NCBI RefSeq assembly: GCF_023055435.1
Contig: NW_025964223.1
Location: forward strand, 44,516,001-44,580,000
DNA from: Haliotis rufescens
Lineage: Eukaryota
DNA: 64,000 nucleotides
Reading direction: 5' to 3'
Shown: piece by piece, positions 13,608 to 54,882 of the stretch
Layout of the letters: each line of letters begins with the position of its first letter
Position numbering within the stretch: position 1 is the stretch's first letter
Program-made: the position numbers and the translations under genes
The notes under the pieces: model-generated
Told to the model about the DNA's origin: nothing
Database searches by the model: none
What the model saw: the letters and a program-made list of their open reading frames with translations, nothing else

Positions 13608-13790
13608 NNNNNNNNNNNNNNNNNNNNNNNNNNNNNNNNNNNNNNNNNNNNNNNNNNNNNNNNNNNNNNNNNNNNNNNNNNNNNNNNNNNNNNNNNNNNN
13701 NNNNNNNNNNNNNNNNNNNNNNNNNNNNNNNNNNNNNNNNNNNNNNNNNNNNNNNNNNNNNNNNNNNNNNNNNNNNNNNNNNNNNNNNNN
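13608..13790. other. Assembly gap
   Basis: N run. Confidence 1.
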
Positions 13791-28399: not shown

Positions 28400-29522
28400 C
28401 AAGGGGACGTCTTTAAGGACACGATAGGGGACGCCTTGTGGCTGAAGATGGCGGACGCCTATAGGGTGAAGCTAGGGGACGCCTTCTGGGTAATCATAGG
28501 GGACGCCTTGTGGATGATGTAATGGGACGCCTTGTGGATGATGTAATGGGACGCCTTGTGAGTAACGATAGCACATACCTTGTTGGTGAAGCTTGGGGAC
28601 GCCTTTTGGGTAACGATAGGGGACGCCTTGTGGGTGAAGGTGGGGGGACGCCTTTTAGGACACGATAGGGGACGCCTTGTGGCTGAATATAGCGGATGCC
28701 TACAGGGTGAAGCTAGGGGACGCCTTCTGGGTAACCATGGGGGACGCCTTGTGGATGATGTAATGGGACGCCTTTTGGGTGAAGATAGGGGACCCTTTAT
28801 GGGTGAATATAGCGAATGCCTCATGGGTGATGATATGGACCACTTTGTGGGTGAAGATATGGACCACTTTGTGGGTGAAGATAGCGATTGCCTTGTGAAC
28901 GAAGCTAGGGGACGCCTTCTGGGTAATGATAGGGGACGCATTGGGGTGATGATATGGAACGCCCTGTGTGTGAAGATAGCGGATGCCTATATGGTGAAAC
29001 TAGGGGACGCCTTCTGGATAACGATAGGGAACGCTTTGGGGGTGAAGAGAGCGGATGCCGGGTGGGGGAAAGGTAGGGGATGCCTTTTGGGAAACGATAA
29101 GGGACGCCTTGAAGAATGAAAATAGCGGGCGCCTTGTAGGTGAAGACAGAGGACGCCTTTAGGGTGAAGATACGGGACGCCTTTAAGAGTGAAGATAGGG
29201 GGCGTCTTGTGGGTACAAATAGGAGACGCTTTGTGGGTGAAGATGGGGACGCCTTGTGGGCGAAGATAGGGGCGCGTTGTAGGTGGAAATAGGGGAAGCC
29301 TTGAGGGTGAAGATAGGGGACACCTTTATAGCGAAAACAGGCTAGGGAACGCGTTGTGTGTAAAGATACGGGGCGCCTTCTGGGGGAGGATAGGAAACGT
29401 CTTGTGTGCAAAATTACGGGACGCCTTCTGGGTGAAGATAGGGGACGCCTTCTGGGTAAATATAGGAGACACGTTGTGGGTGAAGATAGAGGACGTCTTG
29501 AGTGTGAAGTGTATGGGACGAC
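28400..29522. repeat. Degenerate ~24 bp purine-rich minisatellite
   Basis: Consensus ~GATAGGGGACGCCTTGTGGGTGAA repeated across ~1.1 kb. Confidence 0.9.
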
Positions 29523-30829: not shown

Positions 30830-33800
30830 ATGGGGATGAGGATCGTCACCAGTATCAGGATAGTTATCGCGTTAATTTTGCCATGTTCATATTTCACACA
30901 AGGTAAGATATTGTTGATTGTGTTCACTCACGGTGTAATGTGGTTACTTATGGTGTTATGTTCACAATATCAAGTAGAAATCTTGATCATAAAAATGTGA
31001 CATAGCAGTTAGATCGCTCCTTTGTGTTTAGTCAAATGTGAACCGAATAGTGTTTCCTTGTAACAACACGATATCTTGAAACAAAAAACATGTTCTATCA
31101 TGACGTCATGGGGGGGGGGGGGGGGGGGGGGGGGTATGACAATCGGTATTGAGAGAAAAGCTGAAGATAATTGACGTAAAACATATGAGAATACACAATT
31201 TAGTCCCCACCCCTACATAAAATGGACTTGTCCGACATTGCCGAATCATCACCATTTAAAGTAAACACGGGTCAATGTAATGAAAGCTTGCACATTTTAT
31301 CAACATCCTTAAAGAGGCTGTGCAAAATGTTGAAGAGGCAGGCAACATGTTGATATCTCATAAGAAATAGACGACTCCTGATCGTTATGTGTCGGACAAT
31401 AAACACTGCAGGGAGAATAAACCTCTCGGGGTGCGCCCCTCATGGTTTATTTTCCCTGTTGTGTTTTATTGTACGATCACCAACTCCCACTCGTCGTTTA
31501 TTTCTTAAATATACATTCAGGAAAATAGCACTAATGATCGCGAACCTTTACGAAATCCTATGCCTGCACATAACAATGTCGAAACAATAATTGTTTACAT
31601 TGATTTTGAAATGAGATCATTTGAACCCTTCTATGCTTCAAATTTTGATGCCGGGTAATTTCGATATCTTAACGTCGATAATTCACATTCACCTGAATGA
31701 TACCCCTTGCATGAGTCTTGTTTTTACTCTGCATCTTCGTAAAAAAGCGAATTATTATCAGCGGAAGAATTAATCATCACAGATACGATGTGATGTGTAC
31801 ATGTATTATCATCACATGATGGGAAGGTGTCTCGGCAGGATAAAAAACGGTTTCCGTTATGGTCACATATGGAGGTCACGTAGGTACAGCTTGCAGTGTT
31901 TACAAACAAACATGGCGTCACTCTTGTCAATGGGCGATCGAGACGGAAGGGGACATTGAGAAACTATTGGGATAATCGTTATCAGTATCAAAACAGTAGG
32001 CAAAGATACTGAAAATCAGTGTCAGGTTTTGGAGATATATTTGCTAACAATTTAGCGAGGACATCAGGCCTAGCCTTGCGGGGTCAGTTTAATTCAACAT
32101 CGGATTGTGTTTGTAGGACCTCTGAGGCTTGAGGTATTTGCCCCAATTTGGCCGAAATATGTCAGAATTGTTACCTTGTTTCATTTTGTCGCTGTGTGAA
32201 TATCAGACTCTGCACAGGAATGTTAGAGTAGCTTCCCTTTGATGAAGGGTAGTTGCTCTTGAGGTAGGACGGAAGGACTGCCTCGAAAGGGAAGTAGAAA
32301 TAATATGTGTAGGAAACTGTTATTTTTCCTATATTATGTAGTTACGTCAGTGTCTGAGAAACAGGTTTCGGTTGGAACTTAATTGACTGTTCTCACTGTC
32401 CGACTGACAAATCACTGACCTTCTCACGTAATATACATTAATGCGCATATCCAAAGAAAACTTGCCATGCTTAGGTCATGTTTGTGAGAGAGGAGTACAG
32501 GTTTTCGACGACAGAATTAAAAAATGACAATACATGAAAAAGAGGTTATCACGCAAGTGTAATTTGGGATGGTAAATGTCCTATATTAGGTATGGCTGTG
32601 TATCATACCAGAAGACAATTATTTCCTATTTCTCAACATGACAACATTTTTCTTATGACAAAGGCGAAAGAGATGTTTTCCAGATAAACCGTTTTCCATA
32701 TGTGGTTTAGATAATTGTTGAAAAGGCTGAACATCATTATTCATACATTGAATAATAAACTCGGGTGAGATGAGGTGAAATGTGATTGCACTTATATAGA
32801 GACGTGCATACATGTGTGTGTGTGTTTGTGGACTGATGCCAATTTATAGTGCTAGCCCACTGATATGCCATGCCTTAGTTTAGACACAGTATAATGACTC
32901 CGTGCCGACCAGTCCTCGTTTTAGCCCTTTAATGCCGAGCGTCAGGCAGGGTAACAAGTACGAGGCTTTAACGTATTTCGGTATGACGCGGCCGGGGATC
33001 GAACCCCGGACCTTCCGCTCTCCGGGCGGACGCTCTACCACTAAAAACGGAGGCGGTCGGGAAACTCTGTGACTGAATGCCCGATATATGGCTAAAGGTG
33101 TGGGTTTAATGTTCACGTCAAGAAGCATGCCAACCATTCTGTTTCCATTTGAACATTTAGTTATGTCTATACTCTGTAATAAATTACATCAATTTCTAAC
33201 ACAGTCGGCGGACATACTTCTAACGGATTCGGCTTTTAACCCTGATTAACACAACAAAACACGTACAGTTGTATATACAATATCCCCCTTACCACATATA
33301 ATGTTTGAACGTATTTATTCACGCATATACCGTATTCGACGTAATAAGCGCCCATGGTGCTCTCAAAATTAGAAATAGGGGGTTCTTATTAGAATATCGT
33401 AGATTAAAGGAGGTATGGATACGGAGTGATGTACGTAGACATTTCATAATCTGGTATTTTGTGTTAATTGCAGAGAACATATGTCCAACGACATCTGGAG
33501 AAAAGGGTATGTATGCTTGTCATTGACTTAAAGTCAGGTTAAATGTCATTTACGTGATCCATACAGTTGATAAATACAGAACATAGCCTGGTGTCTGTAT
33601 CGGATGGTCTCCTCTTACATATACGTTTCGGAAAATCAATATGACGTCAAAACAATTTCACATTGTGCACTGTTAGAAAGGCTGTAGGGACGAAATAGAA
33701 TCAGTGATGTTGACTGAACCAAACATGACGTAAATGAGTATAGTTATTGATGACATCATATATTGTATCGTCACTATATGTAATACTTCAACAATACATG

Positions 33801-34211
33801 TATCAACACCAGTGCCAGTGGTACCCTACTTGTGAAGATCCGTGTTTAGCATTGGTCTTCAGCAACCCATGCTTGTCATACGAGGCGACTAATGGGAACT
33901 GGTGGTCAGACTCGCTGACTGACAGTCGTCATATATATAGCTGGAATATTACTGAGTGTGGCACTAATTATAAACAACAAATACTTGGTATAATACCTGG
34001 TACTTCCTGTATATCTATGCTTACCTTGAATCATATATATGATAAATTAGATACATGTGCTCTAATATGAAATAGGTAGAATACTGAAATCAATATACAA
34101 TAAAATGTGTCGGTAAAAAAGCTAATAATAATAATAATAATAATAATAGCAGCTTAATTTTTGGCTTTTTCACCGGAATTATTATTATCATTATTATTAT
34201 TATTATTATTA

Positions 34212-34251
<40 letters not shown>

Positions 34252-37200
34252 ACCAACAAGTTATATTGTGCTTCAGTTGTACACGTATGTGAGGGCAATT
34301 TTGCCACTGGAACATCCGTCTATCTGGACACCTTTAAGGCTGTCAACTATGAAGGCGGCTGTACATGTCAACTCAGGGCACAGGGAGGCGCTGTTGATCT
34401 CCAGGTATCAGTTCAGGGGGTTCATGCTGCCTGTGACGCTACCCTGTATTTCGCTCCGCCTATTGATCACACCTATAACTGTGCAGACAAGACACCCACA
34501 ACTACAACAGGAAGGATTGAGTCAGGACAGTCGGTCTTCCTTTCTCTCACCAAAAGCTCTGACGTAGCCGATTTCTGTGTCCATTTAGTACAGACATCAA
34601 CAGGTGAGTTTGCATAATGTAAATGAACCATGGATGCATTTGGATGCAGTTATAAAATATCGTAAGTTTACACCTAGCAGGTATTACGTCAACGTTCAAG
34701 ATGAAAAAAGACTGATTGTGTCGGGCTAGGTTTTATTTATAAATGTGACCAGGTTTTGGCCATGAACTAAAAATTAATATAGACTCATTATCAGTGATCC
34801 TTTCATGTAATTTTCACTGCTATCTTTGCCTCTTACGTCCTATGGAATCTGTTGAGGCAGTTAATCGTGACTGGTTATTCTGGCGTTAACTTTAAATATG
34901 TTGTAATCTTTAGAATAAAGCTAGCAAAACAAGGTTATTTCCAATGTACAATGTTTTAATTATTATCGAATTAAACTTAATTTATTAATTTGATGTAAGG
35001 TATATATGCAATAACTGTGTTTTCACAACCACATGTTTAGTATTTGAGAATCAAATGCAGAATTATTATTTTTTTAAACTTAAGGGTCATTTTCAGGTTG
35101 AAAGATACATTGGAAGAGGGTCATTTACAGATGGTAATATCCCAGATGGAGTTATAAATTCACTTACAGAACCGATTGTAATCTAAAACGTGAGGTATTT
35201 AAGTTAAATCATTAGTGTTCCTTTGCACGTCCAATGAATTTCTAACATGTATATTTTCTCACGTTATTTAGCTGGGTCTTTGAACGTAGCTTGCACAAAG
35301 GGTACGTTGAAACCTGCAAGCACCACGACAATAGCACCTGCACCTGCAGTGACGACCTCTCCAACGACTATTATAGGTAATTACATTCCCGCTATTACAT
35401 TTCCAGCATTTTGAAGATATGCTACAAATATGAAAGGAAGCTCGGGTGGTCAAGTTGTTCTAAGGCGCCACAATTCGCTGGACATAGCACCGTTACAACA
35501 CACTCAGTCATAACAAATGTGAAAAGTAGCATCTGTGGAATAAACATTATCTTAAAAGTGATAAGACTAGTGATAGGGTAGGACTAGGTCAACTATCCTT
35601 CACCCTGGCGTTTAGGTTTAACTTTGTCATCGGTGTTGACAATCGGTGTTGGGAGAATCATCACCATTAAATTAAACACGGGTCAATGTATTGAAAGCTA
35701 GCACATTTTATTAACATCCTTAAAGAGGCTGTGCGAAATGTTGAAGAGGCTGTGCAACATGTTGATATCTCATAAGAAATAAACGACTCCTGATCGGCGC
35801 GCCCCTCATGGTTTATTTTCCCTGTTGTGTTTTATTGTACGATCACCAACTCCCACTCGTTGTGAATTTCTTAAATATACCATGCTTAACATTCAGGAAA
35901 ATAGCACTTATGATCGCGAACCTTTACGAAATCCAATGCCTGCACCTTACACTGTCGAAACAGAAATTGTTTACATTGATTTTGAAATGAGATCATTTGA
36001 ACCCTTCTATGCTGCGAATTTTGATGCCGGGTAATTTTGATGTCTTAACGATAATTTATATTCACCTTAATGATACCCCTTGCATTATTTTTGTTTTTAC
36101 TCCGCAACTTCGAAAAAACGAATTATTATCAGCGGAAGAATCAATCATCACAGATACGATGTGACGTGTACATGTATTATAATCACATGATGGGTACGTG
36201 TCTCGCCAGGATAAAAACGGTTTCCGTTATGGTCACATATGGAGGTCACGTAGGTACAACGTGCTGTGTTTACAAATAAACATGGCGTCGCTCTTGTCAA
36301 TCGTCGATCGAGACGGAAGTAACCATCGGGGACGTGGAGAAACTATTGGGATAATCGTTATCAGTATCAAAACAGTAGGCAAAGATACTGAAAATCAGTC
36401 TCTAATTAGGACGTAGCTGAGACATTTTTCAAGTTTTGGAGATATATTTGCTAACAATTTAGCGAGGACATCAGGCCTAGCCTTGCGGGTTCAGTTTAAT
36501 TCCACATCGGGTTGTGTTTGTAGAACCTCTGAGGTTTGAGGTATTTGCCTAATTTCAAGAAGCTGGATTTGACCGGAATATGTCAGAATTATTACCTTGT
36601 TTCATTTTGTCGCTGTGTGAATATCAGACTCTGCACTTCGTTACGTTAGGAAAGGACAAACAGACTATCATAGAAAGTGTTAGAGTAGCTTCCCTTTGAT
36701 GAAGGGTAGTTGCTCTTGAGGTAGGACGGAAGGACTGCCGCGAAAGGGAAGTAGAGACAATATGTGTAGGCAACTGTTATTTTGCCTATATGTAGTTACG
36801 TCAGCGTCTGAGAAACAGGTTTCAATGGGAACTAAATTGACCGTCCCTAATGTACGACTGACGAATTACTGACCTTCTCACGTAATATATGTTGATGCGC
36901 ACTTGCAATGTTTAGGTAATGTTTGTGAGAGAGCAATACAGGTTTTCGACGACAACATTTAAGAATGACAATAGATGAAAAAGAGGTTATCACGCTTGTG
37001 TAATTTGGGATGGTAAATGTCCTATATTAGGTATGGCTGTGCAACTCACCAGAAGGCAATTATTTCCTATTTCTCAACATGTCAACATTTTTCTTATGAC
37101 AAAGGCTAAAGAGATGTTTTCCAGATAAACCGTTTTCCATATGTGGTTTAAATAATTATTTATGAAAGCTAAACATCATTATTCATAACTTAATAATAAA

Positions 37201-38571
37201 CTCGGGTGAGATGAGGTGAGGTGATATGGGATTGCACATATATAGCGACGTGCATACACGTGTGTGTGTTTGTGGACTGATGCTAATTTATAGAGCTAGC
37301 CCACTGATATGCCATGCCTTAGTTTAACATGAAAACCCCACTCAGACACAGTATACTGACTCCGAGCCGACCAGTCCTCGTTTTAGCCCCTTAACGTCTA
37401 GCGTCAGGCAGGGTAACAACAAGTACGAGGTTTTAACGTATTTCGGTATGACGCGACCGGGGATCGAACCTTCCGCTCTCCGGACGGACGCTCTACCACT
37501 AAAAAACGGAGGCGGTCGGGAAACTCTGTGACTTAATGCCCGATATATGGCTAAAGGTGTAGGTTTAATATTCACGCCAAGAACCATGCCAACCATTCTG
37601 TTTCCATTTGAACATTTACATTTAGTAATGTCTATACATCCATTTCTAAAACAAATGTTTTTATACATATAGGCGGGAATCCTTCTAGCGGATTCGGCCT
37701 TTATCCCTGATTAACACAACAAAACACGTACAGTTGTACATACAATATCCCTCTTACCACATACAATGTTTAAACGTATTTATTCACGCATATAATCGTA
37801 AAGTAAAGGAGATATGGATACGGAGTGATGAACGTAGACATTGCATAATCTGCTATTTTGCGCTGTTTGCAGAGAACATATGTCCAACGACATCTGGAGA
37901 AAAGGGTATGTATGCTTATCATTGACTTAAAGTCAGGTTAAATGTCATTTACGTAATCCATACAGTTGATAGCATCTCCTCTTACATATACGTTTCGAAA
38001 AATCAATGTGACGTCAAAACAATTTCACATTGTGCACTGTTAGAAAGGCTGTAGGGACGAAATAGAATCAGTGATGTTGACTGAACCAAACATGACGTAA
38101 ATGAGTATAGTTATTGATGACATCATATATTGTTTCGTCACTATATGTAATACATCAACAATACATATATCAACACCAGTGCCAGTGGCACCCTACTTGT
38201 GAAGATCCGTGTTTAGCATTGGTCTTCAGCAACCCATGCTTGTCTTACGAGGCGACTATTGGGACCGGGTGGTCAGACTCGCTGACTGACAGCCGTCATA
38301 TATATAGCTGGAATATTACTGAGTGTGGCACTAATTATAAACAACAAATACACAAAACAAACGCTGGTTCTTCCTGTATATTTATGCTTACCTTGAATCA
38401 TATAGATGAAAAATTAGATACATGATATGAAATAGGTAGAATACTGAAATCAATATACAATAAAAAGTGTCGGTAAAGCCGGTTAAAAAGCTAATAATAA
38501 TAATAATAATAATAATAATAGCAGCTTAATTTTTATCTTTTTCACCGGAATTATTATTATTATTATTATTA

Positions 38572-38611
<40 letters not shown>

Positions 38612-41600
38612 ACCAACAAGTGTATATTGTACTTCAGTTGTACACGTATGTGAGGGCAACTTTGCCACTGGAACATCCGTCTATCTGGACACCTTTAAGG
38701 CTGTCAACTATGAAGGCGGCTGTACATGTCAACTCAGGGCACAGGGAGGCGCTGTTGATCTCCAGGTATCAGTTCAGGGGGTTCATGCTGCCTGTGACGC
38801 TACCCTGTATTTCGCTCCGCCTATTGATCACACCTATAACTGTGCAGACAAGACACCCGCAACTACTACAGGAAGGATTGAGTCAGGACAGTCGGTCTTC
38901 CTTTCTCTCACCAAAAGCTCTGACGTAGCCGATTTCTGTGTCCATTTAGTACAGACATCAACAGGTGAGTTTGCATAATGTAACTGAACCATGGATGCAT
39001 TTGGATGCGGTTATAAAATATCGTAAGTTTACACCTAGCAGGTATCACGTCAACGTTCAAGATGAAAAAAGACTGATTGTGTCGGGCTAGGTTTAATTTA
39101 TAAATGTAACCAGGTGTTGGCCATGAACTAAAAAATAATATAGTCTCATTATCAGTGATCCTTTCATGTAATTTTCACTGCTATCTTTGCCTCTTACGTC
39201 CTATGGAATCTGTTTCGGCAGTTAATCGAGACTGGTTATTCTGGCGTTAACTTTAAATATGTTGTAATCTTTAGAATAAAGCTAGGGAAACAAGGTTATT
39301 TCCAATGTACAATGCTTTAATTATACGTCCCGCGACACATTGTATTCATGTGAAATGGATTCGAATTAAAACTTAATTTATTAATTTGATGTAAGGTCTA
39401 TATGCAATAACTGTGTTTTCACAACCACATGTTTAGTATTTGAGAATCAAATGCAGAATTTTTTTTTAAATTTAAGGGTCATTTTCAGGTTGAAAGATAC
39501 ATTGGAAGAGGGTCAAAGAAGCTAAACCATTACAAATAGGCATCATGGTTAATAGCTCCATCTCTTAACTTCATTGATCTAATAAAACTGAAAGGAAATA
39601 ATTTATCTCACGTTCCTCCATACGTTCGCATGTATCAACAGCAAGACGTTCCTAGCCATGTCGGTACCATCTGGTTCTCCGTTAGCTCATGAAATCATAA
39701 ATCTCGATTCATCGCTGAACCAAACCATTCTTCCTTGCTAGTTTGACCACATTCTGCCTGCTTGGCACCACAGGCGTCCACATGGGATGATGATACTTAA
39801 AACATATCCTCGGAAGGCTGTCTTGTTCTGAGACCTGCCTCTCAAATGCGGTTCCGTACTCTCTGGTCAGACACTCTGCGTAATCGTAGGACTACAGCTG
39901 TTGTCAGTATGAAGCGTCATACAGTGATCCTGAGCAGCCCCTGTAACACCCTTATGATTGTAGACCTTGTCACGATTGCTTGTCCACACGCATACCTTTG
40001 AAACATATCAATCAATACTTTCTTTGGCTTCAGTTAATGTTTTGAACTCAGAAATGTATATGCCTACGATTTTCTTTCATTTACAATTGGTAATATCCCA
40101 GATGGAGTTATAAATTCACTTACAGAACCGATTGTAATCTAAAACGTGAGGTATTTAAGTTAAATCATTAGTGTTCCTTTGCACGTCCAATGAATTTCTA
40201 ACATGTATATTTTCTCACGTTATTTAGCTGGGTCTTTGAACGTAGCTTGCACAAAGGGTACGTTGAAACCTGCAAGCACCACGACAATAGCACCTGCACC
40301 TGCACCTGCAGTGACGACCTCTCCAACGACTATTATAGGTAATTACATTCCCGCTATTACATTTCCAGCATTTTGAAGATATGCTACAAATATGAAAGGA
40401 AGCTCGGGTGGTCAAGTTGTTCTAAGGCGCCACAATTCGCTGGACATAGCACCGTTACAACACACTCAGTCATAACAAATGTGAAAAGTAGCATCTGTGG
40501 AATAAAAATTATCTTACAAGGGATAAGACTAGTGATAGGGTAGGACTAGGTCAACTATCCTTCACCCTGGCGTTTAGGTTTTACTTTGTCATCGGTGTTG
40601 ACAATCGGTGTTGGGAGAATCATCACCATTAAATTAAACACGGGTCAATGTATTGAAAGCTAGCACATTTTATTAACATCCTTAAAGAGGCTGTGCGAAA
40701 CGTTGAAGAGGCTGTGCAACATGTTGATATCTCATAAGAAATAAACGACTCCTGATCGGCGCGCCCCTCATGGTTTATTTTCCCTGTTGTGTTTTATTGT
40801 ACGATCACCAACTCCCACTCGTTGTGAATTTCTTAAATATACCATGCTTAACATTCAGGAAAATAGCACTTATGATCGCGAACCTTTACGAAATCCAATG
40901 CCTGCACCTTACACTGTCGAAACAGAAATTGTTTACATTGATTTTGAAATGAGATCATTTGAACCCTTCTATGCTGCGAATTTTGATGCCGGGTAATTTT
41001 GATGTCTTAACGATAATTTATATTCACCTTAATGATACCCCTTGCATGATTTTTGTTTTCACTCCTCAACTTCGTAAAAAAACGAATTATTATCAGCGGA
41101 AGAATCAATCATCACAGATACGATGTGACGTGTACATGCATTATAATCACATGATGGGTACGTGTCTCGCCAGGATAAAAACGGTTTCCGTTATGGTCAC
41201 CTATGGAGGTCACGTAGGTACAACTTGCTGTGTTTACAAATAAACATGGCGTCGCTCTTGTCAATCGTCGATCGAGACGGAAGTAACCATCGGGGACGTG
41301 GAGAAACTATTGGGATAATCGTTATCAGTATCAAAACAGTAGGCAAAGATACTGAAAATCAGTCTCTAATTAGGACGTAGCTGAGACATTTTTCAAGTTT
41401 TGGAGATATATTTGCTAACAATTTAGCGAGGACACCAGGCCTAGCCTTGCGGGTTCAGTTTAATTCCACATCTGATTGTGTTTTTAGAACTTCTGAGGTT
41501 TGAGGTATTTGCCTAATTTCAAGAAGCTGGATTTGACCGGAATATGTCAGAATTATTACCTTGTTTCATTTTGTCGCTGTGTGAATATCAGACTCTGCAC

Positions 41601-43464
41601 TTCGTTACGTTAGGAAAGGACAAACAGACTATCATAGAAAGTGTTAGAGTAGCTTCGATTTGATGAAGGGTAGTCGCTCTTGAGGTAGGACGGAAGGACT
41701 GCCGCGAAAGGGAAGTAGAGACAATATGTGTAGGCAACTGTTATTTTGCCTATATGTAGTTACGTCAGTGACTATGAAACAGGTTTCAATGGGAACTAAA
41801 TTGACCGTCCCTACTGTACGACTGACGAATTACTGACCTTCTCACGTAATATATGTTGATGCGCACTTGCAATGTTTAGGTAATGTTTGTGAGAGAGCAA
41901 TACAGGTTTTCGACGACAAAATTTAAGAATGACAATAGATGAAAAAGAGGTTATCACGCTTGTGTAATTTGGGATGGTAAATGTCCTATATTAGGTATGG
42001 CTGTGCAACACACCAGAAGGCAATTATTTCCTATTTCTCAACATGTCAACATTTTTCTTATGACAAAGGCTAAAGAGATGTTTTCCAGATAAACTGTTTT
42101 CCATATGTGGTTTAAATAATTATTTATGAAATCTAAACATCATTATTCATAACTTAATAATAAACTCGGGTGAGATGAGGTGAGGTGATATGGGATTGCA
42201 CATATATAGCGACGTGCATACACGTGTGTGTGTTTGTGGACTGATGCCAATTTATAGTGCTAGCCCACTGATATGCAAAGGCCTTAGTTTAACATGAAAA
42301 CCCCACTCAGACACAGTATACTGACTCCGAGCCGACCAGTCCTCGTTTTAGCCCCTTAATGCCTAGCGTCAGGCAGGGTAACAACAAGTACGAGGTTTTA
42401 ACGTATTTCGGTATGACGCGACCGGGGATCGAACCTTCCGCTCTCCGGACGGACGCTCTACCACTAAAAAACGGAGGCGGTCGGGAAACTCTGTGACTAA
42501 ATGCCCGATATATGGCTAAAGGTGTAGGTTTAATGTTCACGCCAAGAACCATGCCAACCCCTTTTGTTTCCCATTTGACAATTTACATGTAGTTATGTCT
42601 ATACATCCATTTCTAACACAATCGTTTTAATACATATAGGCGGGAATCCTTCTAGCGGATTCGGCTTTTATCCCTGATTAACACAACAAAACACGTACAG
42701 TTGTATATACAATATCCCTCTTACCACATACAATGTTTAAACGTATTTATTCACGCATATAATCGTAGAGTAAAGGAGGTATTGATACGGAGTGATGAAC
42801 GTAGACATTGCATAATCTGGTATTTTGTGCTGATTGCAGAGAACATATGTCCAACGTCATCTGGAGAAAAGGGTATGTATGCTTATCATTGTCTTAAAGT
42901 CAGGTTAAATGTCATTTACGTAATCCATTCAGTTGATAGCATCTCCTCTTACATATACGTTTCGAAAAATCAATGTGACGTCAAAACAATTTCACATTGT
43001 GCACTGTTAGAAAGGCTGTAGGGACGAAATAGAATCAGGGATGTTGACTGAACCAAACATGACGTAAATGAGTATAGTTATTGATGACATCATATATTGT
43101 TTCGTCACTATATGTAATACTTCAACAATACATATATCAACACCAGTGCCAGTGGCACCCTACTTGTGAAGATCCGTGTTAGCATTGGTCTTCAGCAACC
43201 CATGCTTGTTTTACGAGGCGACTAGTGGGACCGGGTGGTCAGACTCGCTGACTGACAGCCGTCATATATACAGCTGGAATATCACTGAGTGTGGCACTAA
43301 TTATAAACAACAAATACACAAAACAAACGCTGGTTCTTCCTGTATATTTATGCTTACCTTGAATCATATAAATGAAAAATTAGATACATAGTCTCTTAAA
43401 TGAAATAGGTAGAATACTGAAATCAATATACAATAAAAAGTGTCGGTAAAGCCGGTAAAAAAGC

Positions 43465-43499
<35 letters not shown>

Positions 43500-43535
43500 G
43501 CAGCTTAATTTTTTTCTTTTTCACCGGAATAATTA

Positions 43536-43569
<34 letters not shown>

Positions 43570-46500
43570 ACCAACAAGTGTATATTGTACTTCAGTTGTA
43601 CACGTATGTGAGGGCAACTTTGCCACTGGAACATCCGTCTATCTGGACACCTTTAAGGCTGTCAACTATGAAGGCGGCTGCACATGTCAACTCAGAGCAC
43701 AGGGAGGCGCTGTTGATCTCCAGGTATCAGTTCAGGGGGTTCATGCTGCCTGTGACGCTACCCTGTATTTCGCTCCGCCTATTGATCACACCTATAACTG
43801 TGCAGACAAGACACCCGCAACTACTACAGGAAGGATTGAGTCAGGACAGTCGGTCTTCCTTTCTCTCACCAAAAGCTCTGACGTAGCCGATTTCTGCGTC
43901 CATTTAGTACAGACATCATCAGGTGAGTTTGCATAATGTAACTGAACCATGGATGCATTTGGATGCAGTTATAATGTATCGTAAGTGTACACCTAGCAGG
44001 TATCAGGTCAACGTTCAAGATGAAAAAAGACTGATTGTGTCGGGTTAGGTTTTATTTATAAATGTAACCAGGTGTTGGCCATGAACTAAAAAATAATATA
44101 GTCTCATTATCAGTGATCCTTTCATGTAATTTTCACTGCTATCTTTGCCTCTTACGTCCTATGGAATCTGTTGAGGCAGTTAATCGAGACTGGTTATTCT
44201 GGCGTTAACTTTAGATATGTTGTTATCTTTAGAATAAAGCTAGCAAAACAATGTACAATGCTTTAAATAATAGGTTCCGCGACACATTGTATTCATGTCA
44301 AAGGATCTCGAATTAAAACTTAATTTATTAATTTGATGTAAGGTATATATGCAAAAACTATGTTTTCACAACCGCATGTTTAGTATTTTAGAATCAAATG
44401 CAGAATTATTTTTTTTAAACTTAAGGGTCGTTTTCAGGTTGAAAGATACATTGGAAGAGGGTCAAAGAAGCTAAACCATTACAAATAGGCATCGTGGTTA
44501 ATAGCTCCATCTCTTAACTTCATTGATCTAATAAAACTGAAAGGAAATAATTTATCTCACGTTCCTCCATACGTTCGCATGGTATCAACAGCAAGACGCT
44601 CCTAGCCATGTCGGTACAATCTGGTTCTCCGTTAGCTCATGAAATCATAAATCTCGATTCATCGCTGAACCAAACCATTCTCCCTTGCTAGTTTGACCAC
44701 ATTCTGCCTGCTTGGCACCACAGGCGTCCACATGGGATGATGATACTTAAAACATATCCTCGGAAGGCTGTCTTGTTCTGTGACCTGCCTCTCTAATGCG
44801 GTTCCGTACTCTCTGGTCAGAAACTCTGCGTAATCGTAGGACTACAGCTGTTGTCAGTATGAAGCGTCATACAGCGTTCATATCATAGTGTGGTCAATAT
44901 GAAAGATATTTCTTTGTGATGGTTAGATATTTTTTGGGGCATTGTCACCCACACTTTTACCGTTCTGTGATACCCTACTGCCATACAGTTCATGAATTGA
45001 TTGCATGAGAAGGTGGTATAAACGATTAATGTCTACGAGGTGATACATTTGCATGAATTGCAGTCTGATTAGTTGGAGTGCTCAGTGCGAGTCAGCAGTT
45101 GAGTAGTGTTCCTTGGTTTCATGACAATTTATATATTTTTAGCTGGATCACTTAACGTAGCCTGCTCCAGTGGCACACTGAAATCAACAAGTCCACCAGC
45201 AACAACGTCCTCGCCAACCAACGCTCCCAATAACGTAGCAACCACTTTGACTACTTCTGTTACTCAGAGCAAAGGATCATCAAGTGAAAGTCCGGATAAT
45301 ACAGTAACTGAGAGCAAAGGATCATCAAGTGAAAAGCCGGATAATACAGTGACTGAGAGCAAAGGATCATCCAGTGAAATTCCGGATAATACAGTAACTG
45401 AGAGCAAAGGATCATCGAGTGAAAGTCCGGATAATACAGTAACTGAGAGCAAAGGATCATCGAGTGAAAATCCGGATAATACAGTAACTGAGAGCAAAGG
45501 ATTATCGAGTGAAAGTCCGGATAATACAGTAACTGAGAGCAAAGGATCATCGAGTGAAATTCCGGATAAAACAGTAACTGAGAGCAATGGATCATCCAGT
45601 GAAAGTCCGGATAATACAGTAACTGAGAGCAAAGGATCATCGAGTGAAAGTCCGGATAATACAGTAACTGAGAGCAAAGGATCATCAAGTGAAAGTCCGG
45701 ATAATACAGTAACTGAGAGCAAAGGATCATCGAGTGAAAATACGGATAATACAGTAACTGAGAGCAAAGGATCATCGAGTGAAAGTCCGGATAATACAGT
45801 AACTGAGAGTAAAGGATCATCCACTGAAAGTCCAAATATAACACCGTCCGGAAACACAGGTCTTAATACTGCAGAGACTCCTCAGTCCGTCATTGTGGGT
45901 AAGAATCGGTATCGTTCCGTCATGTGCAGCCACGCTGAAAGTCTCATATCATCATTTATAAAAAAAATCCATTGTATAAACTTAACACAAATCCATAGCA
46001 TGAATATAAACGACACACTTTATGATAAAATAATTATACGTCGTTGAATACATATTTATTTCAACTTTTTATATCACTGGTCGTCGTATATCCATTTAAC
46101 CTGAAATTGAATATGTTTTATTCATGTTTATAACTATTTCGACTCGTATTTTGTACATGAATACATTTAGTAACAAAAAGTGTCTAGATGGTGGTAGATA
46201 AGTAATACCCAAATATATTTATGCAATTAGAAACTTTTAAGAACAGACAGATGTTACAGGCAATGTCCGTTGTTGACGCCAATGTAATATGAGCATTATG
46301 TAATTATATTTTATAATATTTATCAAAGTATTCTCAATGTGTTCAACTTTTCCATTTTAGTCAGCTTTGTCGTTGTTGGGGTCTTCGCTGCAATCGTGGT
46401 CGTGATGATACTATTTGGGGTTTTTACCTACTGCAGGTAAGTGTTTAAATTATGAACATTACACAAACAATGGTCTATGGAGATATTCGTGTTTCCGTCA

Positions 46501-46918
46501 TAAGGAGGGTGAGTGAGTGAGTATGGTTTTACGCCGCTTTTAGCAATATTCCAGCAATATCACGGCGGGGTACACCAGAAATGGGCTTCACACATTGTAC
46601 CCATGTCGGAAATCAAACCCGGGTCTTCGGCCTGACGAGCGAACGCTTTAACCACTAGGCTGCCCGACCGACCATCCCCTCCCCCCCCCCCCCCCCCCCC
46701 TTCCCCCGTCATAAGGAGGGAAATGAAGTCCAGTCGAGATCAAAACGTCAAGTACAGCATACGTAAAATAAATATTCTCACCTTTGAGCAAGATGTGTAA
46801 TTTCAATATCCATTTGAAGAGATTCCTCATGCAAAGATGTTTCTTTTTCAGGGACAAATCAAGACTCGGCAAACTAAGAGCTGCACAGAATCTTCCCAAT
46901 GGACATACCAATGTGTAA
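30830..46918 (+). CDS. Gene C: type I membrane protein, 3x 8-Cys (CUB-like?) domains + 13x15-aa Ser/Thr/Glu stalk + TM + short tail
   Basis: Exons 30830-30902 (signal); 33474-33506, 34277-34603, 35272-35376; 37873-37905, 38638-38964, 40228-40338; 42840-42872, 43596-43922, 45143-45898; TM 46361-46436; tail 46852-46918 (DKSRLGKLRAAQNLPNGHTNV*). All ectodomain introns are phase 1 GT-AG with no stops, and the exon layout matches paralog D. Confidence 0.85.
31138..44875 (+). repeat. Intragenic tandem triplication, period ~4.96 kb
   Basis: Units ~31138-35637, 35638-40599, 40600-44875 share intron sequence, SINEs (32765/37205/42170; 33831/38198/43165) and exons, with unit-specific indels. Confidence 0.92.
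39600..40080 (-). mobile_element. Tc1 transposase remnant (also at ~44550-44875; absent from unit 1)
   Basis: Minus strand encodes VWFSDESRF, the Tc1 first catalytic Asp motif. Confidence 0.75.
45259..45843 (+). repeat. Coding 45 bp tandem repeat x13 (VTESKGSSSESPDNT)
   Basis: Direct reading within exon 45143-45898. Confidence 0.95.
46509..46672 (-). mobile_element. Short tRNA-derived SINE (family 3)
   Basis: Near-identical to 19170-19325. GTCATAAGGAGGG on both sides (~46497 and ~46708) is consistent with a TSD. Confidence 0.85.
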
Positions 46919-49101: not shown

Positions 49102-52100
49102 ATGGATAACAGTATCGGGATCATTTTCTTTTTAAGTTTACCAAGTCCGTATCTAATGCAAGGTAAGGCAATTGTTTTCTTTTGTCATCTAGTGTTAGAA
49201 ATAACAGTAATGGTCAGGGCGCAGTACCAAGGCCACATTTACTTTGTTGCAGTATTGATAACATGGTTTGACCCATGCATATCCGAGTTAGAGTAACTGT
49301 TGGTATTCATCAACCCATTCTTGTCGTAAGAGGCATGACGGGATCGGGTTTCATGTTTGCTGACATGGTTGAAACATGTCATCGTATCCCACTAATTGCA
49401 TCGATGCTCATGATGCCAATCACAGCATTGTCTGCTCCAGATTATTTACGGACCGCAGTCAAATAGCTAGGATATTGCTCAGTGCGGCGTTAAAAACAGA
49501 CAAAAACAACAACGATAACATGGTTTCTGTTAATAGTCCACCAATTACGAGATTGGGTTTCCATTAAATAGCATTACATTTGCGATCACTATATCTAAAT
49601 ATTTTACACCTTTTGATGCGAAAATGAAAGGAGCATTTGTTGGTATGCACGTTTCGCACGACTAAGACCGTAGCCATGACTTACAAGGCAATGATCATTA
49701 CGGAATGGGTTTTGTAAATTATGTCTTGGAAAACAATATTGATTCCCTACGAATACGGCTCGTTAGTAATTGAGTTCAAGTGTAGCTAGATTCGCTAACA
49801 CGGACACGTCAAAAACGCACCATCACGGATAAATGGCAGCATTTACTAAGCTTGATAGAAATTGCTAAGGTTTAGTGTGGGGATTATATGCGACAGTCAG
49901 TCAAATGCGTATACATGTAATAGTTATACAAACTGGGTAAAGTATTTATGTCTTCACGCATTTTGTAACGCTGACGCAAATTATTTCGCGTGAGCACGCA
50001 GAGACAGGGAAAAAGAGCCCTACAGCGTTAACTGATATTATCTGTTGGTTGCAGGAAATATTTGTCCTTCGGAAGATGGAAAGGAAGGTATGTATGTTAC
50101 TCCCCGTTATCAGGATACTTGTAAGCGCCAAAACATCTAAGAAAGCATACAACAAAATTACAATTTTCTTATATTTTTATCGTATTAGATATTAAGACTT
50201 AGCTTACAACCGTTATTCGCAGCAGTAAACACTTGACTTGTCTCTGCATGTGTTTGTGACCGGTGTCGCTGATTGGGGCTGGGTACACTCACATTTTCGC
50301 GAACACCCTGTTTCATCACTGTAGTGATTCATAAACACATTATGATGTAGTCGGAATCGTACAGTGGAATCAGCGTTCTTCTGATCATACAATAGATCTA
50401 AAAATCATTGGTGTAAGGACAGACATATCCCTTAGTGGATGGGTTAAAATTTAACATAGCATCGGCGTTATGTAAGCCATATAGAGAAGAGGAACTATAT
50501 CCCCTAAGTGACAAATATTACACAATGCTTCTTCTTCTTACATACATGTATGTTTTGTGTACACCTGAATAACCTGTATTCATTCAATTTCAGTTGTGCA
50601 TATATGTGAGAAAAACTTTGTTAGTGGAGACATTTTCTACTTGAACACCGCCAGAGGTGTAAACTATGAGGGCAACTGTGTCTGCCAACTCAGAGCGCAA
50701 GGTGCTGCCGTTGATCTCGAGTTATCAGTTCATGAAGTCGACGCAGCCTGTGACGCTACCCTGTATTTCTCACCCCCAATCGATCACATGTATAACTGTG
50801 CAGATCAGTCACCCCCAACTGTAGCAGGAAGAATCGAGCCCGGACAGACAGTCTTCATTTCATTTTTCAAACCCTCCCCTGACGTCATAGCTGACTTTTG
50901 TGTGAAGGTGGTGCAAACAACAACGGAAGGTGAGCTTACAGGGATCGAATTTTCCTTGTGAAATCTCGACAGCCTATAAATGATACAGTCTGGTATAGGC
51001 AAACCAGCGCCCAGCTCAAATAGTATTAGGTGGCCATTTCGCCACATATATAGGTGTGCCGTGAACATCCGAGGTTGAATAGGTCTTCAGCAACCCATGC
51101 TTGAGGCGACTAGCGGGATCAGGTGGTCAGGCTCGCTGACTTGGTTGATGCACGTCATCGATCCCAATTGCGTGGATCGATGCTCATGATGTCAATCACT
51201 GGATTGTCAGACTCGATTATTTAGAGATCTCTGTCAGGTCAACACCACCAGTTGAGTGTCTCTGCATCAGGGACCACCATGTCATCTTGGAGGTCGCCAG
51301 TTCTTTTGTTCTGGAAAACTCTACCGCTTAAGATCTGAAGCATCCAAGAACTGACTACATTCCGGGCAAATGTCCACAGAGGCATAAACGTATATTAGAC
51401 CAGACTCTCAATCTTTTTCTTAAATATGCCTAATGGTATGCAGTCGCTCACAGTGATTCCGAACAGTCAACATTAAATGAACACTAATGCTATACAAATA
51501 TTTAGTTATTATGTATTTATTATGCATCTCTCACGATTAGGTGACACTTAGCTTGCGCTAGTTTGGATATGCATACTGATCTCTATTTTGTTAATCTGTA
51601 TTCTATGCAAATTGTGTGAGAGGTGGGTGTTACAGTAGAGCAGGAAATGCTTTCCCCTTTAGCAAACATCTGGTATCACGGATTGTCAGTGATCCATTTA
51701 CATAATTGTCTCCACTTTGTTGTCGAAATCATACTCGTTATCTTCTATCCAGATAGATTTAGTTGTTCTAAAGGAAATCAAAAGCTTTAAATAATTAAAC
51801 AATAACGCAAGTGGTTAGAACATAATAATCATTAGAACACTGAGTAACGCCATTCAACGCCTCAGGCCTTTATAGTGTCTGTGTTCAGCGTTTATGACCG
51901 ATTGAATGTGACATGATTGTATGACTTATCATTTATATTTCCAGTGGGATCAATGGGGTTGACTTGTACACAAGGGACATTGACACCAGATGCATCATCC
52001 CATCAAACTGACAATACACAGCAAGCCACTGCTATATCTGCTGTTGTTGGTAAGAATCGTGATATCATGGATACATCCTTCAGATCTACGCACTGGGATC

Positions 52101-53284
52101 TGCGGTTTGATAGCCAGATCAGTTGTTAAAGCGTGTGCTTGTCCTACTGGAGTCCGTCTGAAGTCCGCATATCGAAATAAGAATGCATGAAGGCCTTTTT
52201 TGATAACGGTTAATTTATTCGCCTGAATTTCCAATGGAATATAACTTTTGTGTGCCATACACTCAAAGTACTTGATGACAGTACTCTTTATAGAAGTGAC
52301 ATTTCGGCCATAAATTAGCATCGCCTAAAGTAAATATTGGAAGTCTTTATAATTGGTCTTTGAAAGGCATTTAGTAGTGATACACATAAGGAAGAGAATG
52401 TATGGATGTCAACTTCTTTATTATGAGGAACACAACGTTTCGGAGAATATGCCTACTCCTTCATCTTCACCTGACAAAGGAGTAAGCATATACCCCGAAA
52501 CGTTGTGTTCCTGTTAATAAAGAAGTTGACATCCATACATTATCTTCCTTATCTTTATAACTGCTTCACAACGTCACAAAAGGTAAAGAAGGTTATCATC
52601 TATACGATGACTTGTCATTGTGATCAAAGGCAGATGCAGCTAATTGAAACAGCGGCCTGCCTTATTGCCTGTTAATTATTTAGTACAGTTTCGTGTTGTA
52701 TTACAGACAATGCATTTGTGTTATGTTTTAGTCAGCTTGATCGTCGTCGGTATTTTTGCTGCCGTTGTAGTGGCGATACTATTAATGGGGCTTGTTGGTT
52801 ACTGCAGGTACGTGTTCGAAGGAGCTATTATTGTCAAGATGATAGCGCCTTAACTACTATTCTTGAATAAATAAACAGAATAATTTACATACGTGTTATT
52901 GTCAAACGTATCTATTTGTTTCACCCATGTGTCTAGTTTTATTTGTGGGCCATGTTTCAAGATTAACATATTTTTTAGATCAGTAGGTTTACTACAGGTC
53001 ACATAGGTTTAGAGGACATCCTAATTAAAAAGTTGTCGTGTAATTTAAAAAAAATACTCCTTGCAAAATATTCCTCTTAAACTGTATAAAGATAAGTCAG
53101 GGTATATGTATTACGATGTATCATAGGAACTGAGTATATTAATATGTTGGTTTTCATTATATTTTGGTGTTTCAGGGAAAGAAGACGAGTAAAGAAATTA
53201 CATGTTTCAGCCGCCCCAATCAATATCAATGACCATAGAAGTATTTCTAGCACGACTCACCAAGGACTCAAGGACGAGAAGTAA
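49102..53284 (+). CDS. Gene D: single-domain paralog of gene C (type I membrane protein)
   Basis: Exons 49102-49162 (signal-like), 50055-50087 (NICPSEDGKE), 50594-50929 (VHICEKNF...CVCQLRAQG...CDATLYF...YNC...DFCV), 51945-52049, TM 52732-52807, tail 53176-53284. Same phases and nearly the same exon sizes as gene C. Confidence 0.88.
49270..49510 (+). mobile_element. Nin-type SINE (family 2), degenerate
   Basis: CAACCCATTCTTGTCGTAAGAGGC core; another copy at 51060-51230. Confidence 0.7.
52386..52552. mobile_element. Inverted pair of Penelope-like terminal repeats with degenerate hammerhead cores
   Basis: ~165 bp near-palindrome. Plus arm CACCTGACAAAGGAGTAAGCATATACCCCGAAACGTTGTG; related single copy at 56971-57073. 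Confidence 0.6.
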
Positions 53285-54740: not shown

Positions 54741-54882
54741 NNNNNNNNNNNNNNNNNNNNNNNNNNNNNNNNNNNNNNNNNNNNNNNNNNNNNNNNNNNN
54801 NNNNNNNNNNNNNNNNNNNNNNNNNNNNNNNNNNNNNNNNNNNNNNNNNNNNNNNNNNNNNNNNNNNNNNNNNNNNNNNNNN
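54741..54882. other. Assembly gap
   Basis: N run. Confidence 1.

What the first reader, a model, noticed from the sequence alone, without database searches (positions are those of the whole stretch)
30830..46918. Receptor ectodomain amplified by ~5 kb exon-intron module triplication (variable-valency receptor)
Seen: a 3-exon module (33 bp, 327 bp and a linker exon), all phase 1, repeats three times with its introns inside one gene between a single signal exon and a single TM/tail. Coding changes between copies are few and synonymous or conservative (T/S, T/A), whereas the introns carry indels, which suggests all copies are functional. Linker exons 1 and 2 resemble each other but differ clearly from the third, while the domain exons are near-identical. 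Inference: an older two-domain gene homogenised by unequal crossing-over, reminiscent of the concerted evolution of repeats in abalone VERL. Modules are symmetric, so copy number could vary between alleles or by exon skipping, tuning avidity.
Basis: partly seen in the sequence, partly recalled or inferred. Interest (0 to 1): 0.78.

Follow-up and report, generated by a model that had tools for sequence, protein, structure and literature searches.

The report
Abalone membrane mucin gene, triplicated domain module
A red abalone gene for a membrane-anchored, mucin-like surface protein carries three near-identical copies of a three-exon domain module, the third added by a recent 5 kb duplication inside the gene; this is a familiar way for binding proteins to grow, here in an uncharacterised family seen only in abalones.

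Summary
On the + strand, 30830-46918 reads as one 12-exon gene: signal exon, three modules of 33-nt exon + 327-nt domain exon + linker exon, a 756-nt mucin-like last linker, a TM exon and a tail exon. All module exons are phase 1 with AG/GT borders.

It is Haliotis rufescens LOC124140049, already in RefSeq with three modules as XP_048240264.1.

The third module comes from a young 4.96 kb tandem duplication: 35121-39924 matches 40077-44874, with 2.5% intron mismatch. It sits on an older two-module gene with 7-8% intron mismatch.

Spliced contigs in two probable RNA runs join domain end > internal linker > 33-nt exon > domain start, and D3 > last linker. They cannot count modules.

The domain has no Pfam or PDB match and did not align with CUB. 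A profile search of 1.84 billion proteins gave credible relatives in Haliotis plus one unnamed ENA record. Predicted family members have 1 to at least 5 modules, and some modules group by species rather than position.

"Receptor", avidity tuning and copy-number variation within the species are untested. This is a new member of a known kind. The scan noted this same stretch before (s1-816552).

The parts
30830..30902 (+). Exon 1: ATG plus signal peptide (24 codons + 1 nt, phase 1), GT donor at 30903
   Evidence: read; same N-terminus as P0003
33474..33506 (+). 33-nt exon of module 1 (carries the first Cys of the 8-Cys unit)
34277..34603 (+). Domain exon D1 (327 nt, 6 Cys)
35272..35376 (+). Internal linker exon L1 (105 nt; one Cys, then a T/P-rich stretch)
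37873..37905 (+). 33-nt exon of module 2, identical to that of module 1
38638..38964 (+). Domain exon D2 (3 differences from D1)
40228..40338 (+). Internal linker exon L2 (111 nt = L1 plus 6 nt in frame)
42840..42872 (+). 33-nt exon of module 3 (1 nonsynonymous change, T to S)
43596..43922 (+). Domain exon D3 (4 differences from D2, 7 from D1)
45143..45898 (+). Terminal linker exon L3 (756 nt). Its start is homologous to L1/L2. It then holds a 45-nt x 12.7 tandem array (45262-45833), which gives a 15-aa Ser/Thr-rich mucin-like stalk.
46361..46436 (+). Transmembrane exon (76 nt)
   Evidence: same peptide in P0003
46852..46918 (+). Cytoplasmic tail exon with TAA stop (the tail is 22 aa)
35121..39924 (+). 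Copy 1 of the young tandem duplication (L1, intron, 33-nt exon 2, D2, part of the next intron)
   Evidence: 96.5% over 4833 columns, offset 4956
40077..44874 (+). Copy 2 of the young tandem duplication (L2, intron, 33-nt exon 3, D3, part of the next intron)
39925..40076 (+). 152-nt junction segment between the two young copies. It is single-copy in the genome and absent from unit 1.
   Evidence: A contig of DNA run X12 spans 39983-40586, across 40076/40077 (table 8).
31243..35123 (+). Older unit 1, homologous to 35655-39515 and 40617-44464 (86-95% in blastn pieces). It lacks the 561 nt found at 39516-40076 of unit 2.

Best explanation
This is a real gene, LOC124140049 of the red abalone Haliotis rufescens. 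It encodes a type I membrane glycoprotein. After the signal peptide come three near-identical modules. Each module is an 8-Cys domain of about 120-140 aa, built from a 33-nt exon, a 327-nt exon and the first residues of a linker exon, followed by a T/P-rich linker. Then come a Ser/Thr-rich stalk of 12.7 repeats of 15 aa, one TM helix and a 22-aa tail.

Shown: the gene grew by duplication of whole exon-intron units. An older event gave two modules, with intron divergence of about 7-8%. A recent 4.96 kb tandem duplication (35121-39924 to 40077-44874, about 2.5% intron divergence) added the third module and a second copy of the internal linker. A tract around the domain exon is more alike between all units than the rest. 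That points to gene conversion or unequal exchange between units.

Shown: the gene lies in a same-chromosome cluster of paralogs. The family was detected in Haliotis plus one record of unnamed origin. Its predicted proteins carry 1 to at least 5 modules.

Inferred: because every module exon is phase 1 and a multiple of 3, each gain or loss of a unit keeps the frame. The number of identical, probably beta-sandwich, binding domains held above the membrane on an O-glycosylated stalk can therefore change in single steps, which would change avidity for a still unknown ligand.
For: - Gene model and splice sites.
- Repeat anatomy.
- The public 3-module model P0003 (XP_048240264.1, 822 aa) sits on a record of 63,335,689 bp, the length of contig C445.
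- Assembly: gap-free across the region. It was built from 50.8x HiFi with read N50 15.7 kb by hifiasm in Hi-C mode (PMC9709998, passages read).
- Splicing (table 8): 495-nt contigs in runs X15 and X16, from two studies, lie on domain end (43867-43920; this piece is listed for X16 only) + linker (40226-40336, 105-nt form) + domain start (43595-43896), with 34 unlisted letters where the 33-nt exon belongs. 209-nt contigs end on or reach L3 (45141-45250); the D3-end piece (43867-43920) is listed for X16 only. Bin 42572-42763 has no RNA depth. Bin 42764-42955 has what a 33-nt exon would give.
- Junction: X12 contig 39983-40586 crosses the junction at 40076/40077.
- Family: 15 domain-exon matches in the own genome, all on C445. 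The profile search of 1.84e9 proteins gave 15 hits at E<=1e-3. The named ones that I read as relatives are all Haliotis; P0015 is an unnamed ENA record.
- Module counts.
- Tree: gene C modules form a clade at 95/85. Modules 3 and 4 of the 4-module gene group by species. H. cracherodii modules 2-5 form a clade at 95/86.
- Paralog modules also share intron sequence.
- Constraint: 2 nonsynonymous of 7 changes, P=0.012.
Against: - No read-level proof exists that three modules sit on one DNA molecule in any other animal, or on one mRNA. All runs laid were Logan contigs, which collapse near-identical copies.
- Unit-specific letters of the assembly were not seen in any of the 4 runs laid: the 6-nt insert of L2 at 40290 and the T at 42857 in the third 33-nt exon (tables 3 and 4). 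Most 'other letters' on unit 3 are the unit 2 letters.
- The young copies differ by 2.5%, which is not far from the genome's 1.37% heterozygosity. Divergence alone therefore cannot exclude two haplotypes placed in tandem.
- Contig depth is about 2x over the duplicated part relative to the single-copy stretch 44876-45250 in X1 and X12. The tool states that contig depth must not be used this way, so this is only a hint.
- The domain's fold and ligand are unknown.
Confidence: 0.72

Rival explanations
1. Assembly artefact. Both haplotypes really have two modules, and the assembler ran from module 2 of one haplotype into module 1 of the other within the shared intron. That would create a false third module.
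For: The young copies differ by 2.5% in introns, against 1.37% genome-wide heterozygosity. Unit 1 lacks 561 nt that unit 2 has, so a haplotype with an undeleted first unit would give the same junctions. The assembly-specific variants of L2 and of the third 33-nt exon were not seen in 4 of 4 runs laid. In X12 the contig across the junction carries unit 1 letters at 40086-40087 and lacks the 6 nt.
Against: The region has no gap. HiFi reads with N50 15.7 kb at 50.8x would span a 10 kb two-module locus end to end, so hifiasm would have little reason to add a unit. Contig depth over the duplicated part is about twice that of the single-copy flank in two animals (a hint only, since the tool warns against reading depth). 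Module gain is common in this family.
Confidence: 0.1
2. The DNA triplication is real, but the mature mRNA normally carries fewer than three modules, because one unit is skipped or is a silent recent passenger. The protein's valency would then be unchanged.
For: The RNA contigs show only one kind of internal junction, and always with the 105-nt linker form and the A-type 33-nt exon. No contig shows L2's 6-nt insert or the third exon's T. All module exons are symmetric, so skipping would stay in frame.
Against: All three units keep identical AG/GT flanks and open frames. Contigs drop minor variants, so absence means little (statement of the tool). X15 shows a D2-type domain start and X16 a D3-type start after the same linker and 33-nt exon. 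That fits more than one internal junction, or allelic variation.
Confidence: 0.15
3. The near-identity of the three domain exons is due mainly to strong purifying selection on old, independently kept copies, not to recent duplication or conversion.
For: Exons are less diverged than introns for unit 1 versus unit 2: 3/360 against 234/3321, Fisher p=9e-8. There is an excess of synonymous changes.
Against: Introns of units 2 and 3 are themselves 97.5% identical over 4.3 kb. Synonymous divergence of D1 versus D2 (2.5%) is below the upstream intron divergence (7.6%). The low-divergence tract continues into the downstream intron at 3.5%. The second 33-nt-exon peptide in H. asinina differs from the first, whereas all three are near-identical in H. 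rufescens.
Confidence: 0.03

Closest known systems
DMBT1 / salivary agglutinin SRCR repeats (human)
   Same: A surface or secreted glycoprotein in which genomic units of exons plus introns, each encoding a binding domain and a linker, are tandemly repeated. Copy number changes the number of binding domains. [quoted passage not shown]
   Different: The domain is different (SRCR there, an unassigned 8-Cys domain here). DMBT1 copy-number variation within a population is measured; here only differences between species and paralogs in predicted proteins are seen. The ligand here is unknown.
LPA kringle IV-2 and CR1 long homologous repeats (recalled, from no call)
   Same: Intragenic tandem units of several kb that hold whole exons and stay in frame, so that unequal exchange changes the domain number of a binding protein.
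   Different: These are vertebrate genes with known domains (kringle, CCP) and proven allelic size variation. None of this was tested here.
Abalone VERL repeat array
   Same: Same genus. Tandem repeats of a Cys-containing extracellular domain that evolve in concert. PMC2704960 and PMC5480393 were seen in the search listing and abstract openings only.
   Different: VERL repeats are ZP-N type and VERL is an egg-coat protein. Here no Pfam family matched any domain exon at E<=10. The unit here is an exon-intron module of about 5 kb, there are only 3 copies, and the tissue is unknown.
Membrane-tethered sialomucins (endomucin, MUC21-like)
   Same: Signal peptide, Ser/Thr/Pro-rich repeated stalk, one TM helix and a short tail. 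NCBI names two relatives 'mucin-21-like' and 'mucin-5AC-like'. Weak Endomucin Pfam hits lie over the stalk and TM.
   Different: The hits are below Pfam's cut-off (16.1 and 14.1 bits against 26.6). Those mucins lack the N-terminal Cys-rich globular modules.
CUB and other jelly-roll beta-sandwich binding domains
   Same: Size of about 110-140 aa and extracellular location. Language-model features of homologues P0007 and P0025 sit nearest to CUB/CRF-BP clusters (0.79-0.85). The Atlas model of P0025 is of low confidence (pLDDT 0.50, pTM 0.36) and aligns with PPC, galactose-binding-like and CBM6 models at TM 0.43-0.56.
   Different: There is no Pfam CUB hit. hhalign of the domain profile against 8 CUB domains of the same genome gave probability 7.2%. 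The Cys pattern is 8 Cys, not the 4 of CUB (recalled).

Membership tests
CUB domain (PF00431) | Match to the Pfam CUB profile at or above its gathering score | tested here: not met
   0 families at E<=10 for each of the 3 domain exons; no CUB hit at E<=1 in 14 family proteins scanned.
CUB domain (PF00431) | Profile-profile similarity to bona fide CUB domains | tested here: not met
   hhalign of A1 (10 domain exons) against A4 (8 CUB exons of the same genome) gave probability 7.2% over 33 columns out of register.
CUB domain (PF00431) | CUB-type beta-sandwich fold | not testable with these tools
Atlas leads only: feature scores 0.79-0.85, and TM about 0.5 to other jelly rolls from a model with pLDDT 0.50.
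VERL / ZP-N repeat proteins | ZP-N or ZP module recognisable in the repeat | tested here: not met
   no ZP-type Pfam match; no PDB sequence match at E<=10.
Membrane-tethered mucin (sialomucin-like architecture) | Signal peptide, Ser/Thr/Pro-rich tandem repeats, single TM, short cytoplasmic tail | tested here: met
   Read from the exons. 45-nt x 12.7 array. This is an architecture, not a homology family. The Endomucin profile is below its cut-off.
Intragenic exon-cassette copy-number loci (DMBT1, LPA KIV-2, CR1 type) | Tandem genomic units that contain whole exons plus introns and keep the reading frame | tested here: met
   units of 4.4-5.0 kb. Exons of 33, 327 and 105/111 nt, all phase 1.
Intragenic exon-cassette copy-number loci (DMBT1, LPA KIV-2, CR1 type) | Unit number varies between alleles within the species | tested here: inconclusive
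   only collapsed contigs were available, so modules cannot be counted. Predicted proteins of the orthologous gene differ between species: H. rubra 1 module, H. asinina 1 plus a remnant, H. rufescens 3.
UPF0669 / C6orf120 (PF17065) | Score at or above the gathering cut-off, recurring in relatives | tested here: not met
   25.7 bits against 27, summed over three repeats, with no single stretch passing. Absent from the other 13 family proteins scanned.

The most novel reading that the evidence does not exclude
The gene belongs to an abalone-specific family of cell-surface recognition proteins, built on a previously undescribed 8-Cys domain, in which valency is a fast-evolving trait. Whole exon-intron modules would be gained, lost and homogenised between closely related species, and perhaps between individuals. 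That would change avidity for a ligand involved in a rapidly evolving interaction such as gamete, microbe or settlement-cue recognition. It would be a molluscan counterpart of DMBT1 or CR1.
Probability: 0.2. Interest if true: 0.65.

Novelty: new member of a known kind. Interest (0 to 1): 0.4.

Why it matters
The locus shows how a binding protein gains domains. The youngest step is still readable base by base: both copies, the junction and a mosaic of conversion-like tracts. It sits inside a family where the same process has run several times, with 1 to at least 5 modules per predicted protein.

The family has no Pfam, PDB or literature annotation. Searches for four locus and protein accessions, and for one given protein name together with the genus, found 0 papers in the held library. 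For abalone biology, where fast-evolving surface proteins drive species recognition, a lineage-restricted multivalent surface protein is a reasonable candidate to study.

The mechanism itself, in-frame exon-cassette duplication with concerted evolution, is well known. The gene is already annotated, so the finding is solid but not surprising.

Tried and rejected
- **Pfam.** Scans of the three domain exons and the L3 reading frame gave nothing at E<=10. Scans of 14 family proteins gave only sub-threshold hits, inflated by repeats. UPF0669 was rejected because it was below the cut-off and did not recur.
- **PDB.** A sequence search with the domain profile gave 0 hits at E<=10.
- **CUB hypothesis.** It came from Atlas features. 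I tested it with hhalign against 8 CUB exons of the same genome: probability 7.2%. It is not accepted as membership.
- **Word search.** The domain exon found only P0001, an ORF read through a genomic contig of a paralog.
- **Big search hits set aside.** P0008, P0011, P0013 and P0014 were judged spurious repeat-driven hits from reading their sequences, and not tested further. P0015 (ENA, organism unnamed, E=6.7e-4) sits on a very long branch.
- **H. cracherodii ortholog of this gene.** Not found among proteins of 219-1438 aa. A shorter, longer or unannotated one is not excluded.
- **Contig depth.** I considered it as a copy-number test and kept it only as a hint, because the tool says contig depth cannot be used so.
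- **Junction mechanism.** I could not tell homologous unequal exchange followed by a 561-nt deletion in unit 1 from a non-homologous tandem duplication with 152 nt of filler. The 152 nt are single-copy in the genome.
- **Tree.** Three rows were dropped before building: P0012 modules 1 and 2 (very divergent, partial matches) and P0016 module 1 (partial).
- **Unused loci.** The five 10-kb loci L013-L017 were fetched and not analysed.
- **Supplements.** Supplementary files of papers were not opened. Expression tables there could name the tissue.
Full report
**What is there**

Between 30830 and 46918 the + strand reads as one gene of 12 exons.
- Signal exon: 30830-30902.
- Three modules, each made of a 33-nt exon (33474, 37873, 42840), a 327-nt domain exon (34277, 38638, 43596) and a linker exon. 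The linkers are L1 35272-35376, L2 40228-40338 and L3 45143-45898.
- TM exon 46361-46436 and tail exon 46852-46918, ending in TAA.
- The three 33-nt exons share the flanks ttgcag/gtatgt, and the three domain exons share cttcag/gtgagt.
- All module exons are multiples of 3 entered in phase 1. The sum is 2268 nt, or 755 aa.
- L3 holds a 45-nt array of 12.7 copies at 94% matches. This is a 15-aa Ser/Thr-rich repeat.
- The region has no N. The nearest N runs end at 13790 and begin at 54741.

**The repeat**

The repeat finder gives three-copy families at spacings of about 4.36 and 4.96 kb. Self-blastn shows two layers.
- A young pair: 35121-39924 against 40077-44874, 96.5% over 4833 columns, with 103 mismatches, 21 gap openings and an offset of 4956.
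- An older layer: unit 1 (31243-35123) matches units 2 and 3 at 86-95% in pieces.

Divided by feature, the young pair has 109 mismatches in 4305 aligned intron columns (2.53%) and 56 gap columns. It has 4/327 in the domain exon, 1/33 in the small exon, and 0/105 plus a 6-nt insert in the linker. Unit 1 against unit 2 has 234/3321 in introns (7.05%) with 380 gap columns, 3/327 in the domain exon and 0/33 in the small exon.

Divergence of unit 1 from unit 2 is not even along the unit.
- 31243-33473: 7.6%.
- 33507-34100: 5.2%.
- Domain exon: 0.9%.
- 34604-35123: 3.5%.
- From 35121 on, where the young duplicate begins: almost none.

In the three-way alignment, unit 1 is the odd one out at 290 sites and unit 3 at 137. 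Most of the 137 lie in the linker region, where L3 is only distantly alike. Unit 2 is the odd one out at 34, and 8 sites differ in all three. From about 34200 to 35120 the three patterns are mixed. I read this mosaic as exchange between units (conversion or unequal crossing-over) on top of two duplication events.

The junction of the young copies holds 152 nt (39925-40076) that occur once in the genome. The 409 nt before it occur twice, in units 2 and 3. Unit 1 lacks both.

**Are the copies under selection?**

The seven variable sites of the domain exons are 5 synonymous and 2 nonsynonymous, T/A and T/S. With 75.6% of sites nonsynonymous, 2 or fewer of 7 has binomial P=0.012. With the small exon added (3 of 8), P=0.024. 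That is modest evidence of constraint.

For the young pair, exons are not significantly cleaner than introns (Fisher p=0.054). For the old pair they are (p=9e-8). But there the low-divergence tract includes intron sequence, so recency or conversion explains much of it.

**Identity**

A profile of ten domain exons of the same genome (A1) was searched against 1.84 billion representatives. It found 15 proteins at E<=1e-3, and 9 at E<=1e-10.

P0003 is XP_048240264.1, 'uncharacterized protein LOC124140049 [Haliotis rufescens]', on a record of 63,335,689 bp. That is the length of the window's contig C445. It has the same three modules, including L2's extra two residues and the T/S change.

P0003 also carries 67 extra residues between L2 and the third small exon. 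Of these, 61 are the open frame upstream of 42840, and the rest must come from a further small exon. In two probable RNA runs the bin 42572-42763 has no depth. The bin 42764-42955 has what 33 nt at the contig's depth would give.

The assembly paper (PMC9709998, passages read) reports 50.8x HiFi with read N50 15,755 bp, hifiasm in Hi-C mode, 616 scaffolds, 1,334,471,355 bp and 1.37% heterozygosity.

**Reads**

Only Logan contigs were on offer, apart from miRNA libraries. I laid X1 and X12 (DNA, two studies) and X15 and X16 (probably RNA, two studies) on 39500-45250.

Results for the reading:
- In X16 one 495-nt contig lies on 43867-43920, then 40226-40336 with 6 letters left out, then, after 34 letters not listed, on 43595-43896. 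That is domain end > 105-nt linker > 33-nt exon > domain start without introns, so it is a spliced product with at least two modules.
- X15 has a 495-nt contig with the same linker and domain-start pieces listed.
- A 209-nt contig of X16 joins 43867-43920 (D3 letters) to 45141-45250 (L3). X15 has a 209-nt contig whose L3 piece is listed.
- X12 has a DNA contig 39983-40586 across the junction at 40076/40077.

Results against, or neutral:
- In all four runs the only contig over 40290 lacks L2's 6 nt, and the only letter at 42857 is the A of units 1 and 2.
- Of the 40 listed 'other letters', 25 equal the letter of unit 2 or unit 1, 1 equals unit 3's letter (a place in unit 2's tail), and 10 match none; the other 4 lie in unit 2's tail and match unit 1, one of them unit 3 as well.
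- After the same linker and small exon, X15 has D2 letters and X16 has D3 letters.
- Contigs merge near-identical copies, so modules cannot be counted from them.
- Summed contig depth over the duplicated part is roughly twice that over 44876-45250 (X1 about 15-33 against 12-13.5; X12 about 110-370 against 53-56). The tool says contig depth must not be read as copy number, so I give this as a hint only.

**Family**

The own genome has 15 matches to the domain exon at E<=0.01. All are on C445, from 44.55 to 44.87 Mb, plus one at 47.13 Mb.

One match is in the window at 50596-50925. It is a single-module paralog directly downstream (signal exon from 49102, TM near 52740).

Predicted proteins:
- H. 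rufescens: 4 modules (XP_046363232.2), 3 (this gene), 2 (LOC124140069) and 1 (LOC124137142).
- H. cracherodii: at least 5 modules in the counterpart of LOC124140069 (P0016, same 90% cluster).
- H. asinina: 4 modules (P0024).
- For this gene's ortholog, H. asinina (P0006) has 1 domain, then an internal linker very like L1, a second small-exon peptide, and then the L3-type stalk. H. rubra (P0025) has 1 module.

In a maximum-likelihood tree of 28 modules, with 3 rows dropped:
- The three modules of this gene form a clade (95/85), apart from the H. asinina + H. rubra module (100/99).
- Modules 1 and 2 of the 4-module gene pair by position across species.
- Its modules 3 and 4 pair by species (84/74 and 100/99).
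- H. cracherodii modules 2-5 form a clade (95/86).

Paralog modules share flanking intron sequence too: 85.5% over 683 nt, and 93.9% over 791 nt. Module gain and homogenisation are therefore a habit of the family.

**The domain**

There is no Pfam match and no PDB sequence match. Atlas features of two homologues lie nearest to unnamed mollusc and rotifer clusters, and then to CUB/CRF-BP clusters at 0.79-0.85. The tool calls those scores leads only. The Atlas's own low-confidence model of P0025 aligns with jelly-roll modules (PPC, galactose-binding-like, CBM6) at TM 0.43-0.56.

hhalign against eight CUB exons of the same genome gave 7.2%.

The tail is 22 aa, and its end is conserved in H. asinina. 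That it resembles a class I PDZ ligand is my recollection of that motif and was not tested.

**Comparison and verdict**

The closest known systems are genes whose binding-domain number changes by in-frame exon-cassette duplication. One is DMBT1 (PMC4946147 and PMC4851238, listing and abstract openings). LPA KIV-2 and CR1 are recalled from no call. VERL is an analogy within the genus (PMC2704960 and PMC5480393, listing only).

No paper in the held library names LOC124140049, XP_048240264, LOC124140069 or XP_046363232, or pairs 'mucin-21-like' with Haliotis.

'Receptor', avidity tuning and allelic variation remain untested.

Noticed in passing
window 49102-53300 (+): A single-module paralog lies about 2 kb downstream on the same strand. 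It has a signal exon from 49102, a 33-nt-type exon near 50058, a domain exon at 50596-50925 (67% identical to D1), a short linker near 51940 and a TM near 52740. The H. asinina counterpart is P0007.
   Followed up: partly
window 42639-42839: RefSeq model XP_048240264.1 puts 67 extra residues between L2 and the third 33-nt exon. Of these, 61 are the open frame just upstream of 42840. The two probable RNA runs show no contig depth there (bin 42572-42763).
   Followed up: partly
window 42188-42571; also 32880-33137 and 37342-37668: A very high-copy interspersed repeat lies in the same intron of each unit. Summed contig depth reaches about 7x10^5 in X1 and 3.5x10^6 in X12. It was not classified.
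   Followed up: no
window 34123-34249, 38492-38609, 43465-43567: (TAA)n and (ATT)n microsatellites lie just upstream of each domain exon and differ in length between units.
   Followed up: no
window 28423-29509: A 24-nt minisatellite of 45 copies (67% matches) lies about 1.3 kb upstream of the start codon, with strong GC skew in that bin.
   Followed up: no
window 31110-31134: A run of 25 G in intron 1.
   Followed up: no
G000:C445:44787552-44789438 (L010, L012) and protein P0016: LOC124140069 has 2 near-identical modules in H. rufescens. The H. cracherodii protein in the same 90% cluster has at least 5. This is a second case of module-number change between close species.
   Followed up: partly
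window 12847-13030, 13608-13790, 54741-54882: Three N runs of 142-184 letters.
   Followed up: no
window 46490-46700: An interspersed-repeat-like element followed by a C-rich run lies in the intron between the TM and tail exons. It was not classified.
   Followed up: no
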